The notes beneath the pieces were generated by a model. The model was not told the origin of the DNA and made no database searches. It saw only the letters and a list, made by a program, of their open reading frames with translations. A stretch of 64,000 nucleotides of DNA, taken from Thecamonas trahens ATCC 50062 (lineage: Eukaryota > Protista > Apusomonadida). Shown one piece after another: positions 36,057 to 63,009 of this stretch; the first letter of the stretch is position 1, and every line of letters begins with the position of its first letter. A program made the position numbers and the translations under genes. The stretch covers positions 213,487-277,486 of the forward strand of contig NW_013657659.1 in NCBI RefSeq assembly GCF_000142905.1. Reading direction: 5' to 3'.

Positions 36057-36156
36057 NNNNNNNNNNNNNNNNNNNNNNNNNNNNNNNNNNNNNNNNNNNN
36101 NNNNNNNNNNNNNNNNNNNNNNNNNNNNNNNNNNNNNNNNNNNNNNNNNNNNNNNN
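36057..36156. other. Assembly gap
   Basis: N run. Confidence 1.
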
Positions 36157-36265
36157 CGCTCTCCCTGGGTCCCCATCCCCATCCACATGCCACTCGTCAG
36201 CGCTCGCAACCGCAACCAACCGCAGCCACTCGTCGCTCTCGCCCCTCCCCGCCCCGCCCAACTCC

Positions 36266-37990
36266 ATGGTGCGGTTTGACGCAGACTTTGAGACGGGCAA
36301 CCTGGCAAGGGTAGAGCCAGCACCCGCGCGCAGACATGCCTTCTGTCTGTGGCTTCGTGGAAGCGAGTGCGAGGATGCCGTCGGCAGAGAACCTGCTCAA
36401 GCCGCCGACCACGACGGCTGGTTCCACTTCCGACTCACCGACATGGCGCCAGAGACGACGTACACGCTGACGCTGATGAACCTGCCTCTTGCGCTCAAGC
36501 GCATCTACGCCAAGGATGTTCGTCCGCTGGTAGCATGGGGTGCCGATGGGTCCTGGGTCCGCCTCGAAGGCCCCTGCCAGTTCAAGACCTCCGCCAACGC
36601 TCTCCAGCTGCGGTTCAAGATCCGCGCGACGAGGGCATCGCCGGCCAACTCGCGTCTGGGGCCGGACGTCGGTGGCTCGTCCGACGACGCCTCATCAGAT
36701 CTCCCGCATCGGCCTGCTGTCGGATCATCCGCTGACGAGCTGGCTAGCGTCCGCATCGCCGCCTGGCTGCCGTACTCGCATGCAGAGCTCCAGTCCACAC
36801 TGAGTGGCCTGGACGCCAAGTTTGGCAGCCGGCGCCGTGGGCGGAGCAGCAAGCTTGCGCCGCGCGTCTTTTACGCGCGTGAGCTTCTCGCTCGCTCACG
36901 GCTCGGCCGCCGCATCGACCTACTCACCGTCACCCAAGATGTGGCCGCGCCACCGCCGCTCCCACCAGTCGCCGACGTCGCCAAGCCGTCGCCGCACTCG
37001 GAGACCTCGGGCAACTCACGGTCGGGAGCAACTGTCGGTGGTACAACAACTGACGCCAGCGGCGACGCCCGAAGCAGGTCGTGCGGGCACGCGCTGCGCC
37101 GCGCCTCCCGTCCTCGGCCCTCGATGCGCAAGACTACGTCGACGGCGCGTTCCCGGACCGAACCTCGCCGCGGCCGCCCATCTTTCCCACTCGTCAGGTC
37201 GTGCTCATCTTTGCGCGGGTAGTGGCATCTGACTCACCGGCGTCACATGTGGTCGACGCCTTGATCCGCGCGCTCACGTCCGACTCGGCGGTGGCCACAC
37301 TCCTCCGCTCGCGCTTTGTCTTTAACATTGTGCCAATGGTCAACCCGGACGGCGTAGCGGGTGGCTGCAACGACGCTACTGTCAACGGCGTGGACGTTGC
37401 GGAAGCCTTGGCCGCGCGCAGCGACGACGGCATCGCCAGCCGCACACCGGGCGCTGCCGCGCTGAGAGCGCTCGCTGCTGCGCTCGGCAAGCGCCGATCG
37501 GTGGCGTATGTGTTTGAGCTCCGGGCCAACGTGGCCCGTCGGCACACCCGGATTCTCGGTAACGCGCTCCCGAACGCGTACGATCAGACCAGCAACGCGC
37601 TGTTTGCGCTCCTCTTCGCGCGCGCCTCGCCGTTTGTCAACATCGGGTCGGAAACGCCGTCGTCAACACTTTTCACCCCGCTCGGCGAGCCGTCCACCTT
37701 GTCACATCCCGCCTTCCATGACCTCACGCGGGCTGTCCATGCGTACACGGTCAAGGTTGCGGCACATGCGTTGCCACGCAAAGGTCTGCCCCGCGCGCCT
37801 CATCCGCCGGCCGATCCAGGTGGCTACATTCACACGGCGCATGCGCTGCTTGAGGCGATGGCGGACATGGCGGGAGGTGCCGGCGGTGAAGGCACCTTGC
37901 TTGCCGATCGCGCAAAGGTGGCGATGTCGGTCCCGCTTGCGCCGCTAGCGGCGTCGGCGGCAGCGCTCGGACTTGACTCGGGCTCGGCGC
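36266..37990 (+). CDS. CCP5/AGBL5-like cytosolic carboxypeptidase module, catalytically degenerate; N-terminal part of a probable fusion; apparent frameshift near 37068-37070
   Basis: FDADFETGNL, WFHFRL, PYSH, FYARELLARSRLGRRIDLLTVT, FPDRTSPRP and FVFNIVPMVNPDGV. The zinc motif HPGE reads VASD. Confidence 0.8.
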
Positions 37991-39664
37991 GACTGCTTTT
38001 TGCGCCTCGTCTCCAGCGCCGACACTGGTCTTCTCGGCCGTTCGCAAGGTTTCGGCCAAGCAGCGCAACTTGGCGCTTGAAGCTGCGTTTGCGCCGCGAC
38101 CGGCGCCGACATATCGACTCGCGCACGTCTCGTCGGCCTCCTTCGAACAACGCTCACGGCGCACGGCTTTGTCGACGCTGGCCCTGATCACCGTGGCTGG
38201 ACGCTGTTCTGGGTCGGGCGGCACATCAGGCCGGCGCTGCTGGTGGCGATGCAGCCGTACCAAAAGGTCAACCACTTTCCGCTCTCGTCCGAGTTGACTC
38301 GCAAGACCGAGCTGACGCTCAACTACGAAACAGCACGGGCGCAAGCTGGCGACGCGCTCTTCGACTTTATGCCGCAGACGTTTGCGCTGCCACGGCAGGC
38401 CGACGAGCTACGTGCGGCAATCGAGTCTGGGGCGAGCGACTCGCCGCTGTGGATCTACAAGCCATCGTCGGGCGCGTGCGGACGCGGCATTGCGGTGCTC
38501 GACTCGCTAGCCAAGGTGCCTGCGCTCGACAAGCCGGCGGTGGTGCAGGCGTACTTGGACAACCCGCTCCTTGTCGACGGGCGCAAGTTTGATCTCCGAC
38601 TGTATGTGGTGGTGACCTCGTTTGCGCCGCTGAGGGCGTTTCTGTACGAAAACGGCCTCGCACGGTTTGCCAACCTCCCATACACGTCTGCGGCTCAGTC
38701 GCTGGACTCTGCAGCGACGCACCTCACCAACGTCTCACTCAACAAGCGGCACAAGGAGTTTGTGAAGAACGCTTCGGCAGCCGACGATGGGGTCGGATCG
38801 GTCTGGTCGGTGCGTGCAATGCGAGTGCGGCTGGCGGCCATGGGGTTTGACGTGGGAGCCATCTTTGCCGCCATCGAGCGAGTCATTGTGGCTGCGCTGA
38901 GTGCAGTGGAGCCAGCGATTGCGCCGCATGTGGCCGGGCATCCATTCCTGCCGTGCTTTGAGCTCTTTGGCTTTGACGTCATTCTCGACGCCGACGCCAA
39001 GCCTTGGCTCCTCGAGGTCAACTCGTTTCCGTCGGTCTCGTGTGGAACGCCTATGGATCTGGACATCAAGTCTCGACTTGTGGCAGACATTTTTACGCTT
39101 ATCGGCCTGGTGCCGCCTGCTTACCGCGAGGCCGTACCCAAGGCGAGCTCGACCGTGGACGCGGCTCGGGCGGAGCTGGCACGGGCCGGAGAGACCGGGT
39201 TCAAGTGCATTTATCCGGTGCCCACGGCGGCGGCAGCGGCAGCCGGGTACGATGCTCTTCCGCTGAGCGTGCCGTATGCCGACGATGAGGTGGAGGCTGT
39301 GTTTGGCGATGCCGGGGTCGAGACATTTGACCCGTCGGTGCCGCTGACGCCTGCGGCGGCACGAGTGGTGTTCCGGGCCTATCTGCGTGCAATGGCAGAG
39401 CGGCTGGGCGACGGTGGGGAGGTGGATCCGGCTATTTCAGAGTTTGTGGTGATGACGAGCAAGTATGCCGAGGTGCGGTCGAGTGATGAGCTGACGGCGC
39501 TCCGTGAGTACATTGCAGCGCATGAGGCAGCTGACCTGGCGCGCGGCGGGAGCAGCAGCGAGCAGCTGATGCATTTCATTGCTGGGGCGAGCGAGGACGA
39601 GCTCGAGTCCCTGCTCAAGGCTGTCCACGAGTATGTGCCTGCGGCGGTGCTGATGCATGTCTGA
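37991..39664 (+). CDS. TTLL5: TTLL5-like tubulin glutamylase module; C-terminal part of a probable fusion; apparent frameshifts at 37997-38001 and 38135-38136
   Basis: TLTAHGF..W.LFW.G.H, QKVNHFP..ELTRK, WIYKP, KFDLRLYV, HLTN, FELFGFDV and WLLEVN. TTLL5-type tail ARVVFRAYL and FIAGASEDELE. Confidence 0.88.
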
Positions 39665-39681
39665 GAGGGCTAGCAGGCAAG

Positions 39682-41915
39682 TCACCAGTCCGAGTCCGAG
39701 TCCCAGTCATCGTCGTCCGAGTCGACAACAACAACCTTGCGGCGGTCGCCCATGGCAGACGCGAGCGCAGCGGCAATGCCGGTGAGCGGCGGTGAGGCCA
39801 CAGCGGGAGCGGAGGTGGAGCCAAGGTCGGTGCGCTCGGGGGCGCCGACCTTTTTGAGCGATGCCACGCCCTGGTGGGATTGGATGGATGAGAGTAGCGA
39901 GCCACGACCAGCGCCAACGGTGGGGCGAGTGCGTGCGGTGGCTGGCGTGGCGGCGGCGGCTGGAGGCGGCGGTGGCGGCGGCGGCAGCGCACCAGAGCCA
40001 GCCGAAGCCGGTGTGGCCCTGGCCTTGGCCTTGCCGCCCTTGCGGATGGAGGCGCCGGGCGGCGGAGGCGGTGGAGGCGGGGGCGGAGCGCCGCCGAACG
40101 GCGGCGGCGGCGGTGGCGGCGGCGGGGCGGCAGAATCACCGTCTGTCGCAAGAGCTGCGGCGGCCGAGTCACCGAGGGAGGTCGACTTGGAAGTGAAGCG
40201 ACGCTTGAGGGTCTGCCAGCGCGACTTGCGCTTGCCAGCGAGGGCATCGGGGATGCCGCTCTCGGGAGGGGCGTCGACGCGGCGGCAGAGGCCGTGGTCG
40301 ACAAGAGCCTTCAGCCAAAACTCGACCTCAGCCTCGGTCTCTGCCAGGAGCCAATAGGTATTGAGATTGCGGCGTGCGACGTAAAAGGTGGTACCAGGAA
40401 GAAAGCCATCCCGGTCGACCTTGCCAACGGTGCAGCCTGCGACGATGACGGAGCCGCGCGGCTTGTTGTCAGGCGAGAGGTTCTTAAAGTAGTAGAGGAC
40501 CATCTCTTGGAGGACGCAGTAGCGCTGGCGCCACTTGCTATTGGAGCTTCCCTCTTTGGCGAGATAGCCGGCCATGTCTGCGGCGCCGAGGTCGGAGAGC
40601 AGCATATCGTGCTTGGCCTTTGTGGCAGTGTCCGAGTCAGGCTCGGCACCGGCGCTAGGGTCGCGGGCAGGACGAGACAAGCCGTGCGGCGTGGCCGATG
40701 GGATGGCAGCAATGATGGCGGCGGTGGCCTCTGAGTCGTCGATTCCGATGGAGGCGAAGAATTCGTGATCTGCATCCTCCAACTCGTCTCCGTCGACCTC
40801 ATTGGCCTGACAGGCGTGTGCGGCAGCGTCAAAGCCAGCCGCGATGAGCCACTGGCAAACCTGGTAGGTGGTACGCGACCGGCGCCAAGAGCTAGCAAGC
40901 TCGGCCATGTCGGGCGCCGAGATGACGTCGGATGGGTTGTGGTCAACAAGTGACGGCAGGGCGTCCATTGACTTGGCAGCATCGACCGGGCGCGAGCGGA
41001 CCGGCTCGGGCGTCTTGGCGCGGGTGTGGACAGCCGTGGTGTCGACAACCGGGAGGAGCGGCATGGATTGGATGGCTGAGGCCGACTTGCGCCGCTTCGG
41101 CGGCGGGGCTGGAGGACCGCCTGTTAGCTGGCCGGGGATGCTGAGCAGTCCGGCGCCAGGCTTGGGTTTGGGCTTGGGCACGGGAGCCGGCTTGGGCTGC
41201 GTGATTGGCGATGCAGCGGACGGCTTGGGCACGGGCGCCGGCGGTGTCTTCTTGGGCACAGGCTCGGGCTTGGGCATGGGCTTGGGTACAGGTGCCGGTG
41301 GGGTCTTCTTGGGTACGGGCGCTGGTGGTGTCTTCTTGGGTACAGGTGCAGGTGGGGTCTTCTTGGGTACGGGCGCTGGTGGTGTCTTCTTGGGTACAGG
41401 TGCCGGTGGGGTCTTCTTGGGCACAGGCTCGGGCTTGGGCATGGGCTTGGGTACAGGTGCCGGTGGGGTCTTCTTGGGTACGGGCGCTGGTGGTGTCTTC
41501 TTGGGTACAGGTGCCGGTGGTGTCTTCTTGGGTACGGGCTCGGGCTCGGGCTTGGCCATAGGCTCGGGCTCGGGCTCAGGCTCGGGCTCGGGCTTGGGCT
41601 TGGGCTTGGGCTTGGGCTTGGCGACGGGCGGAGCAGCGGCGGCAGCAGCATCAGCAGCAGCAAGCGAGTCGGCGGCAAAGGCCACCGATCGCTTGCGGAC
41701 AAGATCCGACTTTGGCAAAAGAGGCGGAGGAGCAGCCTTGGACCGCTTGGGCGGCGGCCTCGAGGCGCCTAGTCGGCGACGAGGTGACGACGACGGCGAG
41801 GAGGACAAGTCCAAGATGAGCCGAGCAGAGGTAAGTAAACAGAGAAGGATGAGAGGTAGGAGGTGGAAAGGGGGGGGGGGGGGGGGGGTGAGAGGTCCGT
41901 ACCCGAGCCGTGCAT
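39682..41915 (-). CDS. Pro-rich repeat-SAM-PH-polyPro-WH2/C/A protein (putative Arp2/3 nucleation-promoting factor); intron 41769-41902
   Basis: SAM-like [11 protein letters not shown]...NEVDGDEL...[13 protein letters not shown]...WRQRYCVL...LYYFK...FWLKAL. WH2 RGSLLSSIQ...LKKV. Central [13 protein letters not shown]. Acidic [13 protein letters not shown]. Confidence 0.85.
41222..41620 (-). repeat. Coding tandem repeats: 27-bp PVPKKTPPA (about 9 copies) plus (KP)n/(EP)n
   Basis: Visible periodic GTCTTCTTGGG(T/C)AC units. Confidence 0.9.
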
Positions 41916-42062
41916 GGTCAGGTGGTGCCCTCCAAGGCGGCGTTGCTACTCCCTTTGCAAAAGGTGCCACTCCCCGGCCGACGCACCTGCAAACGCCACT
42001 TTGGTCACATGGCGCATCCGGCTGGGCCTGCCGACGGGCGGCGGGCTAAACTGGCCGTGCGG

Positions 42063-62216: not shown

Positions 62217-62364
62217 CTGGAGGGGGGGAAGGGGAGGGGGGGTGAGTGGTTGGACAGCCTTTTTCGGTGCGACTGTGTGATCGAAAGGAGGGGGAGGGGG
62301 GAAGGGGACGGGGGAAGGGAGGGGGGGAGGGGGGGAGGAGGGGAGGGAGAGAGAGAGAGAGAGG

Positions 62365-63009
62365 NNNNNNNNNNNNNNNNNNNNNNNNNNNNNNNNNNNN
62401 NNNNNNNNNNNNNNNNNNNNNNNNNNNNNNNNNNNNNNNNNNNNNNNNNNNNNNNNNNNNNNNNNNNNNNNNNNNNNNNNNNNNNNNNNNNNNNNNNNNN
62501 NNNNNNNNNNNNNNNNNNNNNNNNNNNNNNNNNNNNNNNNNNNNNNNNNNNNNNNNNNNNNNNNNNNNNNNNNNNNNNNNNNNNNNNNNNNNNNNNNNNN
62601 NNNNNNNNNNNNNNNNNNNNNNNNNNNNNNNNNNNNNNNNNNNNNNNNNNNNNNNNNNNNNNNNNNNNNNNNNNNNNNNNNNNNNNNNNNNNNNNNNNNN
62701 NNNNNNNNNNNNNNNNNNNNNNNNNNNNNNNNNNNNNNNNNNNNNNNNNNNNNNNNNNNNNNNNNNNNNNNNNNNNNNNNNNNNNNNNNNNNNNNNNNNN
62801 NNNNNNNNNNNNNNNNNNNNNNNNNNNNNNNNNNNNNNNNNNNNNNNNNNNNNNNNNNNNNNNNNNNNNNNNNNNNNNNNNNNNNNNNNNNNNNNNNNNN
62901 NNNNNNNNNNNNNNNNNNNNNNNNNNNNNNNNNNNNNNNNNNNNNNNNNNNNNNNNNNNNNNNNNNNNNNNNNNNNNNNNNNNNNNNNNNNNNNNNNNNN
63001 NNNNNNNNN
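62365..63009. other. Assembly gap
   Basis: N run. Confidence 1.

What the first reader, a model, noticed from the sequence alone, without database searches (positions are those of the whole stretch)
36266..39664. Tubulin-code eraser-writer fusion: dead CCP5-like deglutamylase joined to a TTLL5-like glutamylase
Seen: CCP motifs (FETGNL, FYARELL..S..GRRIDLLT, FPD...PRP, VPMVNPDGV) run into TTLL5 motifs. The CCP frame has no stop before the TTLL homology begins (PTLVFSA...TYRL...LLRTTLTAHGF), there is no intergenic space, and that first TTLL frame has a stop at 37974-37976 and no ATG of its own. Adding one base to each of three homopolymers (C3 37068-70, T5 37997-38001, G2 38135-36) gives a single ORF of about 1133 aa. 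The CCP zinc ligands are lost (HPGE to VASD, DxH to ELR, no NR), while the TTLL motifs (KFDLR, GFD, EVN) are intact. Known: TTLL5 initiates glutamate branches and CCP5 removes the branch-point glutamate, normally as separate genes. Inference: the dead eraser may have become a substrate-reading or targeting module for the writer. I know of no described fusion of this kind.
Basis: partly seen in the sequence, partly recalled or inferred. Interest (0 to 1): 0.85.

Follow-up and report, generated by a model that had tools for sequence, protein, structure and literature searches.

The report
Dead CCP5 fused to TTLL5 glutamylase
In the marine flagellate Thecamonas trahens, one intronless gene encodes a 1,133-residue protein that joins a catalytically dead copy of the tubulin deglutamylase CCP5 to an intact TTLL5-type tubulin glutamylase; the three apparent frameshifts are errors in the reference assembly, and no other organism searched has this fusion.

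Summary
Pfam finds a CCP N-domain, a weak M14 carboxypeptidase match and a strong TTL domain on the + strand, in frames 2, 1, 0 and 2. These are two samples of the organism and an unrelated estuary metagenome. The true sequence is therefore one open frame of 3,402 nt (1,133 aa) with no introns seen.

The organism is Thecamonas trahens. The gene is already public as the uncharacterised model AMSG_05091 (1,100 aa), which bridges the assembly errors with false introns.

The CCP module keeps a confident M14 fold whose nearest solved structure is human CCP5. It has lost both zinc histidines, the zinc glutamate, the catalytic glutamate and the arginine/asparagine residues that hold the substrate carboxylate. 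The TTL half keeps every invariant catalytic residue and a TTLL5-type C-terminal tail.

The genome also has a separate intact CCP5-like gene and a separate TTLL5. No second CCP-TTLL fusion turned up in protein, metagenome or literature searches.

The function of the dead module is inferred. A non-catalytic targeting or scaffold role is more likely than glutamate reading. This is a new variant of known kinds, of moderate interest.

The parts
36266..39664 (+). Whole gene: one intronless ORF of 3,402 nt (1,133 aa) once the three bases missing from the assembly are counted. Public model AMSG_05091 (P0001, 1,100 aa) covers it with false introns.
   Evidence: three single-base insertions in read contigs, no joints; identity of P0001.
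36278..36637 (+). CCP N-terminal beta-sandwich domain (Pepdidase_M14_N). It starts at residue 5 of the protein, as in CCP5-type proteins.
   Evidence: PF18027, E 2.6e-5, 24.8 bits, above the 23.2 cut-off; one of only two such domains in the genome.
36770..37870 (+). Dead M14 carboxypeptidase domain (pseudo-CCP5), with a low-complexity insert at about 36931-37120. Changed catalytic positions: VASD for HPGE at 37222-37233, Asp for Arg at 37372-37374, Ala-Glu for Asn-Arg at 37399-37404, Arg and Asn for the two His at 37522-37530, and Lys for the catalytic Glu at 37753-37755.
   Evidence: alignments A1 and A2. AF2 pLDDT 82.6, pTM 0.82; the top 7 PDB fold matches are human CCP5.
37068..37070 (+). 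Assembly error 1: a run of C that is one base too short (C3 in the window, C4 in reads). It switches frame 2 to frame 1.
   Evidence: table 4: C put in behind 37067 in X1, X6 and X7.
37997..38001 (+). Assembly error 2: a run of T that is one base too short (T5 in the window, T6 in reads). It switches frame 1 to frame 0.
   Evidence: table 4: T put in behind 37996 in X1 and X7.
38135..38136 (+). Assembly error 3: a run of G that is one base too short (G2 in the window, G3 in reads). It switches frame 0 to frame 2, inside the TTL N-terminal subdomain.
   Evidence: table 4: G put in behind 38134 in X1 and X7.
37871..38010 (+). Ala/Gly-rich linker between the dead CCP module and the TTL domain. 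It holds in-frame Met codons that could in principle start a TTLL-only product.
   Evidence: translation; low pLDDT at the end of the model.
38011..39106 (+). TTL (ATP-grasp) glutamylase core. All family-invariant residues are kept, including the Lys of IYKP at 38459-38461, KFDLR at 38585-38599 and EVN at 39014-39022.
   Evidence: PF03133, E 1.4e-73; invariant columns of A3. TTLL6 and TTLL7 structures, E 4e-57 and 6e-46.
39350..39661 (+). Short helical C-terminal tail that aligns with the TTLL5-specific CID domain. It keeps the equivalents of human R677, F680, Y683, L684, E801 and L804.
   Evidence: colinear BLAST motifs, E 0.06 and 0.68. (alignment A4). (residues named in PMC13052805). (six-helix model, pLDDT 62.7). 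The fold search was inconclusive.

Best explanation
Shown: the locus is one intronless gene of Thecamonas trahens. Its true sequence is a single 1,133-codon frame. The three frame breaks are homopolymer under-calls in the reference assembly.

Shown: the product has four parts in this order. First comes a CCP N-domain. Second comes an M14 carboxypeptidase domain that keeps the CCP5-like fold but has lost all three zinc ligands, the catalytic glutamate and the carboxylate-anchoring Arg and Asn-Arg. Third comes a flexible linker. Fourth comes a TTLL5-type TTL core with every invariant catalytic residue, followed by a CID-like tail.

Inferred: the protein works as an ATP-dependent glutamate ligase, a writer probably of the branch-initiating TTLL5 type, acting on tubulin tails or other acidic substrates. 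Its N-terminal dead CCP5 body cannot hydrolyse anything. That body serves as a non-catalytic targeting or scaffold module, bringing the ligase to the places or partners that CCP5 normally visits, such as basal body or axonemal microtubules or CCP5-binding proteins.

The gene arose from duplicates, because the genome keeps a separate intact CCP5-like gene and a separate canonical TTLL5.
For: - One ORF: the three extra bases are seen in X1, X6 and X7. One 1,984-nt contig spans 36405-38385, and there are no joints.
- Selection: of 11 single-base differences in those read sets, 8 are synonymous in the corrected frames, and 4 of 5 inside the dead module are synonymous. This was worked out by hand.
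- Expression: RNA-library contigs lie on both halves (X14).
- Dead active site: H52V, E55D, R102D, N111A, R112E, H152R, H154N and E229K, at positions at least 90% conserved in 72 CCPs.
- Fold kept: pLDDT 82.6 and pTM 0.82, with human CCP5 in the top 7 PDB ranks at E about 1e-15. The only PDB sequence hits are CCP5.
- TTL core intact.
- TTLL5 kinship: the best named hits are TTLL5 at E about 1e-75, and CID residues are conserved.
- Separate genes: an intact CCP5-like gene at C33 and a standalone TTLL5 with a clear CID at C30.
- Precedent for a non-enzymatic CCP5 role: CCP5 binds CP110 through its N-terminus and inhibits ciliogenesis without needing enzyme activity (PMC10210458).
Against: - No RNA read bridges the linker at 37870-38020, so a single mRNA and a single protein are inferred from the ORF only. 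The library types of X1 and X6 are not on record.
- The fusion was found in one species only, so there is no cross-species conservation to argue for function. The synonymous excess rests on 11 sites.
- Nothing tested shows what the dead module binds. The complex prediction gave no verdict.
- The CID-like tail is short and weakly similar.
- Assignment to CCP5 and TTLL5 rests on best hits, not on a tree, because the script machine was lost.
Confidence: 0.7

Rival explanations
1. Reader model. The dead CCP5 module still binds glutamylated or acidic tubulin tails. It may recognise the branch-point glutamate that TTLL5 makes and CCP5 removes. It could then give positive feedback, guide elongation, or shield new branch points from the active CCP5.
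For: The fold is kept and nearest to CCP5. CCP5 is the enzyme specific for the gamma-linked branch glutamate (PMC5269731). Dead erasers reused as binding modules are a known theme among pseudoenzymes (general knowledge). The excess of synonymous changes in the module suggests it is under constraint (hand count).
Against: The positions that hold a substrate's free carboxylate and polarise the scissile bond in M14 enzymes are all changed, two of them to acidic residues. These are the equivalents of CPA Arg127 and Asn144-Arg145, which are at least 90% conserved in CCPs. In the window they are R102D, N111A and R112E. An acidic pocket should repel glutamate.
Confidence: 0.15
2. Relic or two products. 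The CCP part is a decaying, functionless leader. The working product is a TTLL5-only protein made from an internal promoter or an internal Met in the linker, or by proteolytic separation.
For: In-frame Met codons lie in the linker. The module has lost every catalytic residue. No RNA read bridges the junction. The fusion is seen in one species only.
Against: About 580 codons upstream of the TTL domain stay open with no stop. A confident fold is predicted. Four of 5 nucleotide differences in the module are synonymous. RNA-library contigs lie on the CCP part as well. The N-terminal strands of the TTL domain follow the linker directly in the same frame.
Confidence: 0.12
3. Pseudogene or assembly chimera. 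Either the frameshifts are real and the locus is dead, or the two halves were wrongly joined in the assembly.
For: The window as assembled has three frame breaks in 1.1 kb, plus an N gap 110 nt upstream of the start.
Against: Contigs from the organism's own runs and from an independent 2025 estuary metagenome all carry the extra base at each site. They are colinear with the window, with no joints. The genome holds only this one copy. Other frameshifts in this genome were also judged assembly errors by other agents.
Confidence: 0.03

Closest known systems
Human CCP5 / AGBL5 (PDB 8V3M-8V3S), the branch-point deglutamylase
   Same: The N-domain sits at the very N-terminus and is followed by an M14 domain. 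CCP5 is the only PDB sequence hit (E 9e-15) and takes the top 7 fold matches (E about 1e-15, TMq 0.67-0.72). Shared motifs lie around the active site (FPD..RP, NPDGV, YT).
   Different: All three zinc ligands, the catalytic Glu and the carboxylate-binding Arg and Asn-Arg are replaced. The module has no C-terminal tail of its own and runs into a TTLL instead. It shares only 21-22% identity with human CCP5 and 32% with the organism's own intact CCP5-like gene.
TTLL5 (animal TTLL5; own-genome standalone TTLL5 at G000:C30)
   Same: The TTL core is 36-45% identical to named TTLL5s and 43-46% identical to the own-genome paralog. All invariant catalytic residues are kept. The tail aligns with the TTLL5-specific CID and keeps the conserved R, F, Y, L, E, L positions.
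   Different: It carries about 580 N-terminal residues of dead CCP5. The CID-like tail is much shorter and only weakly similar (E 0.06 and 0.68), whereas the standalone paralog matches the CID at E 4e-9. The basic stretch between the core and the GF.RI(F/Y)P motif is short. This was read off the translations, and the standalone paralog's stretch is also short.
Inactive M14 members CPXM1, CPXM2 and AEBP1/ACLP (from general knowledge, not tested here)
   Same: They are M14 folds that have lost catalytic residues and are thought to act as binding modules.
   Different: They belong to the secreted N/E subfamily, are fused to discoidin domains and act in the extracellular matrix. I know of no described inactive member of the cytosolic CCP subfamily, and none fused to a TTLL.
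TTLL12 (TTLL with an N-terminal SET-like domain; called a pseudoenzyme in PMC10883266, listed)
   Same: A TTLL-family protein that carries a second enzyme-like module of another modification system at its N-terminus.
   Different: In TTLL12 the TTL domain itself is the inactive part, by general knowledge. Here the TTL core looks active and the partner module is the dead one.

Membership tests
Cytosolic carboxypeptidase (CCP, M14D) family | CCP-specific N-terminal beta-sandwich domain (Pfam PF18027) | tested here: met
   E 2.6e-5, 24.8 bits against a 23.2 cut-off, residues 5-124.
Cytosolic carboxypeptidase (CCP, M14D) family | M14 alpha/beta carboxypeptidase fold | tested here: met
   The Pfam PF00246 match is only 20.1 bits, below the 21.6 cut-off. 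However, phmmer finds 98 CCPs at E<=1e-10. The AF2 model has pLDDT 82.6, with CCP5 and bacterial CCP structures as top fold matches.
Cytosolic carboxypeptidase (CCP, M14D) family | Zinc ligands His-x-x-Glu plus a distal His | tested here: not met
   HPGE reads VASD and DLHAH reads ELRAN. The module is a homologue but cannot be a working metallopeptidase.
Cytosolic carboxypeptidase (CCP, M14D) family | Catalytic Glu (YTLE motif) and substrate-carboxylate binders (Arg of GxYR, Asn-Arg of DLNR) | tested here: not met
   YTLE reads YTVK, GHYR reads GCND and DLNR reads DVAE.
CCP5 subfamily | Nearest relatives are CCP5 rather than CCP1/4/6 or CCP2/3 | tested here: inconclusive
   The only PDB sequence hits and the best fold hits are CCP5. 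The closest own-genome paralog is the CCP5-like gene at C33 (E 5e-19) rather than the one at C39 (E 2e-10). No tree could be built because the script machine was lost.
TTL/TTLL family | TTL ATP-grasp domain with invariant ATP-, Mg- and substrate-binding residues | tested here: met
   PF03133 at E 1.4e-73. All 24 invariant columns of a 56-sequence alignment are kept. Solved TTLL6 and TTLL7 structures match at E 4e-57 and 6e-46.
TTLL5 subfamily | Best matches are TTLL5 orthologues | tested here: met
   the top named hits are TTLL5 of insects, coral, fish and nematodes (E 1e-75 to 1e-68). TTLL4-named hits score lower (E 1e-60 and weaker). No tree was built.
TTLL5 subfamily | C-terminal CID six-helix bundle (human residues 658-820; PMC13052805) | tested here: inconclusive
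   Alignment A4 puts the window's R, F, Y, L and E, L on human R677, F680, Y683, L684, E801 and L804. Pairwise BLAST gives only E 0.06 and 0.68. The AF2 model is helical but has low confidence (pLDDT 62.7). No PDB sequence or fold hit was found.
TTLL5 subfamily | Initiating (branch-forming) glutamylase activity with alpha-tubulin preference | not testable with these tools
   This needs an enzyme assay.

The most novel reading that the evidence does not exclude
The dead CCP5 body is a natural reader of the tubulin code. In this reading it is a non-hydrolysing module that recognises glutamylated or acidic tubulin tails, or the microtubule sites CCP5 docks on. Wired in cis to the writer TTLL5, it would form the first natural writer-reader enzyme for glutamylation. 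As a Rosetta-stone fusion, it would also imply that TTLL5 and CCP5 work as a physical pair in other eukaryotes.
Probability: 0.15. Interest if true: 0.8.

Novelty: new variant of a known kind. Interest (0 to 1): 0.55.

Why it matters
TTLL5 and CCP5 make and break the same bond, the gamma-linked branch glutamate on tubulin tails and on substrates such as RPGR. Loss of either enzyme causes retinal degeneration in mammals (PMC11649768, PMC5269731). A natural fusion of the two folds is an evolutionary hint that they share a docking site or partner. It also provides a ready-made, naturally inactivated CCP5 body whose binding properties can be measured.

If the dead module binds microtubules or modified tails, it could explain how writers are targeted. 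It could also serve as a probe for glutamylation.

There is a practical point too. The public model AMSG_05091 is wrong. It is 1,100 aa instead of 1,133, and the N-terminal strands of its TTL domain are mistranslated, because of three homopolymer errors. This reference assembly shows the same kind of error at other genes.

Tried and rejected
1. Complex prediction of the dead CCP domain against the TTL core gave no answer (score 0.14, mark 0.34). It is not evidence either way.
2. The ESM Atlas look-up of P0001 found the sequence itself and no usable neighbours.
3. The JGI metagenome scan with the dead module returned only two distant canonical CCPs, 33-35% identical.
4. The search for homologous proteins with the 309-aa module (candidates of 170-540 aa) found nothing at E<=1e-15. 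With residues 1-600 of P0001 it found only P0001 itself and one canonical CCP.
5. A Pfam scan of 16 long CCP hits found no TTL domain in any. A Pfam scan of 17 long TTLL4/5-like hits found no CCP module in any. P0190, P0266, P0239 and P0247 have long N-extensions, but BLAST or hhalign shows these are unrelated to CCPs.
6. P0002 and P0003 looked like close relatives. They are firefly gene models of three or four tandem CCP copies and have no TTL domain.
7. The CID-like tail gave no PDB sequence hit and no fold hit. The model has low confidence.
8. The low-GC end of the window is only an N gap.
9. The script machine was lost. No tree, no computed dN/dS and no charge analysis were done. Codon effects of the 11 variants were worked out by hand.
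10. The corrected 1,133-aa sequence was never assembled or handed to any tool. Pieces were searched apart by reference, and the public model P0001 was used where a long query was needed.
11. The Nature 2024 CCP5 structure paper is not held in the library. CCP5-specific contact residues could therefore not be checked, and general M14 residue roles were used instead.
Full report
**What is in the sequence**

On the + strand between 36266 and 39664 there are four overlapping open frames, in frames 2, 1, 0 and 2. Pfam places three domains on them:
- A cytosolic-carboxypeptidase N-domain at 36278-36637 (PF18027, E 2.6e-5, above the curated cut-off).
- A weak M14 carboxypeptidase match at 37189-37359 (20.1 bits, cut-off 21.6).
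- A strong TTL domain at 38249-39106 (E 1.4e-73).

The frame-0 piece carries the first strands of the TTL domain. It opens only after the TGA at 37974-37976 and has no ATG. The break near 38135 falls between two conserved TTL motifs only 41 nt apart, so it cannot be an intron.

**The frameshifts are assembly errors**

I laid contigs of four public runs on 36160-39760.
- A C behind 37067, in X1 and X6 (both labelled as the organism, 2010 and 2020) and in X7 (an estuary metagenome of 2025).
- A T behind 37996, in X1 and X7.
- A G behind 38134, in X1 and X7.

One X1 contig of 1,984 nt runs unbroken from 36405 to 38385, across the CCP-to-TTL junction. No joints were found, so no introns are seen. 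With the three bases counted, the frame is 3,402 nt, or 1,133 aa.

The genome holds only this one copy. Other agents reached the same verdict for apparent frameshifts elsewhere in this genome.

**Signs of constraint and expression**

The same read sets show 11 single-base differences from the window. I placed them by hand in the corrected frames:
- Eight are synonymous: 37191, 37335, 37494, 37671, 38081, 38719, 38764 and 39313.
- Three are conservative replacements: 37607 Ala to Val, 38244 Val to Ala, and 38846 Phe to Leu.
- Inside the dead carboxypeptidase module the count is four synonymous to one replacement.

Random changes would be synonymous about a quarter to a third of the time, so the pattern fits a translated, constrained frame. 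The sample is small.

Contigs of a metatranscriptome library (X14) lie on 36569-36719, 37158-37306, 37512-37678 and 38250-38400. That covers both halves, but none bridges the linker, and DNA carry-over cannot be excluded.

**Identity**

The public protein that matches is AMSG_05091 of Thecamonas trahens ATCC 50062. It is an uncharacterised protein of 1,100 aa with only the TTL domain in its precomputed annotation. Comparing it with the window shows how the model handles the errors. It jumps the first error with a false intron. It reads wrong frames around the second and third, so the N-terminal strands of its TTL domain are mistranslated. No paper in the library names this protein.

**The CCP half is a dead CCP5-like module**

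Against all PDB sequences, the 309-aa piece 37069-37995 hits only human CCP5 (E 9e-15). I aligned it with 72 CCPs (A2; also A1). Positions at least 90% conserved in those CCPs are replaced in the window as follows:

| Role | Consensus | Window |
|---|---|---|
| Zinc ligands | HPGE | VASD |
| Arg of GxYR | Arg | Asp |
| Substrate carboxylate binders | Asn-Arg of DLNR | Ala-Glu |
| Two His of DLHAH (one a zinc ligand) | His, His | Arg, Asn |
| Catalytic residue | Glu of YTLE | Lys |

By the established roles of these residues in M14 enzymes (CPA His69, Glu72, His196, Arg127, Asn144, Arg145, Glu270), the module can neither bind zinc nor hydrolyse. It has also lost the anchors for a substrate's free carboxylate.

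The fold itself is kept. An AlphaFold2 model built with that alignment has pLDDT 82.6 and pTM 0.82. Its seven best PDB matches are the human CCP5 structures (E about 1e-15, TMq 0.67-0.72), ahead of bacterial CCPs.

**The TTL half is an intact TTLL5-type ligase**

The best named relatives are TTLL5 of insects, a coral, a fish and nematodes (36-45% identity, E about 1e-75). TTLL4-named proteins score lower. All 24 invariant columns of a 56-sequence alignment are kept. These include the ATP-binding Lys, KFDLR, HLTN, GFD and EVN.

The C-terminal tail aligns with the TTLL5-specific CID domain. It keeps the residues that PMC13052805 names as conserved at the CID binding groove: R677, F680, Y683, L684, E801 and L804. 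The similarity is weak, though, and the fold test was inconclusive.

**Context in the genome**

The genome has ten TTL loci and two CCP N-domains. A separate CCP5-like gene at C33 has every catalytic residue intact and is the closest paralog of the dead module (32% identity). A second intact CCP gene lies at C39.

A standalone TTLL5 at C30 (862 aa, 43-46% identical in the core) has a clear CID (E 4e-9 to fish TTLL5). The fusion is therefore built from extra copies and does not replace either enzyme.

**Is the fusion found elsewhere?**

- A full HMMER pass of the dead module over 1.84 billion representative proteins found itself, and otherwise only canonical CCPs at 27-51% identity.
- Sixteen long CCP hits have no TTL domain.
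- None of the best 120 TTLL5/4-like proteins of 605-1,925 aa carries a CCP domain.
- Seventeen long TTLL4/5-like proteins rescanned at a lax threshold have no CCP domain either. Four with long N-extensions are unrelated to CCPs by BLAST or profile comparison.
- A JGI metagenome scan, a search for fragments and the ESM Atlas gave nothing closer.
- Literature searches found no CCP-TTLL fusion and no inactive cytosolic CCP.

Only the top of each hit list could be inspected, and transcriptomes of other apusomonads may not be in these collections. Absence elsewhere is therefore likely but not proven.

**How it most likely works**

Three things are shown: one ORF, a dead but folded CCP5-like body, and an intact TTLL5-like ligase.

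The rest is inferred. The protein is probably a glutamylase whose N-terminal dead eraser acts as a non-catalytic module. I favour a targeting or scaffold role, at about 0.5 within an overall 0.7 for the gene picture, for two reasons:
- The canonical glutamate-binding residues are gone, and two of them are now acidic.
- CCP5 is already known to act without enzyme activity through its N-terminus, which binds CP110 (PMC10210458).

A functionless relic with a TTLL-only product stands at about 0.12. A pseudogene or assembly chimera is nearly excluded.

A complex prediction of the two domains gave no verdict.

**Verdict**

The functional inference is untested, and in its substrate-reading form it is weakened.

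The gene is a new architectural variant of two well-known families. It is present in public databases but not described. Interest is moderate (0.55). It is a single-species curiosity that still offers a direct experimental handle on how writers and erasers of tubulin glutamylation are coupled.

The corrected full-length protein was not assembled or submitted to any tool.

Noticed in passing
window 36266-39664 versus P0001 (AMSG_05091): The public gene model is 1,100 aa instead of 1,133. It skips about 16 residues at the first homopolymer error. Across the second and third errors it reads wrong frames, so the first strands of its TTL domain are mistranslated.
   Followed up: yes
window 37607, 38081, 39313: Contigs of runs labelled as the same organism differ from the window at these bases: 37607 C>T (Ala to Val), 38081 A>G (silent) and 39313 C>T (silent). 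These may be further reference errors or strain differences.
   Followed up: partly
window 36058-36156 and about 62300-62999: There are runs of N (scaffold gaps). The first lies about 110 nt upstream of the start codon, so the promoter and 5' UTR are incomplete. The second explains the apparent GC drop at the end of the window.
   Followed up: yes
L003 2329-5586 (-) = G000:C33: An intact CCP5-like gene with all catalytic residues. Its 5' part runs into a long N gap and a Gly/Asp/Tyr-rich repeat, so its true start is unknown.
   Followed up: partly
L002 1705-4293 (-) = G000:C30: A standalone TTLL5 orthologue (862 aa). Its C-terminal region clearly matches the vertebrate TTLL5 CID (E 4e-9). This suggests the CID adapter domain predates animals and their RPGR partner.
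   Followed up: partly
P0002 (Abscondita terminalis) and P0003 (Lamprigera yunnana): These firefly gene models hold four and three tandem CCP units. In some units the zinc and substrate motifs are degenerate (for example RPSE or NPSD for HPGE, and DLRAQ for DLHAH). They may be merged tandem genes that include dead copies.
   Followed up: partly
window 39682-41970 (-): The convergent neighbour ends 18 nt after this gene's stop codon. It is a proline-rich protein with repeated PVPKKTPPA units. Another first-reader note covers it (s1-753735).
   Followed up: no
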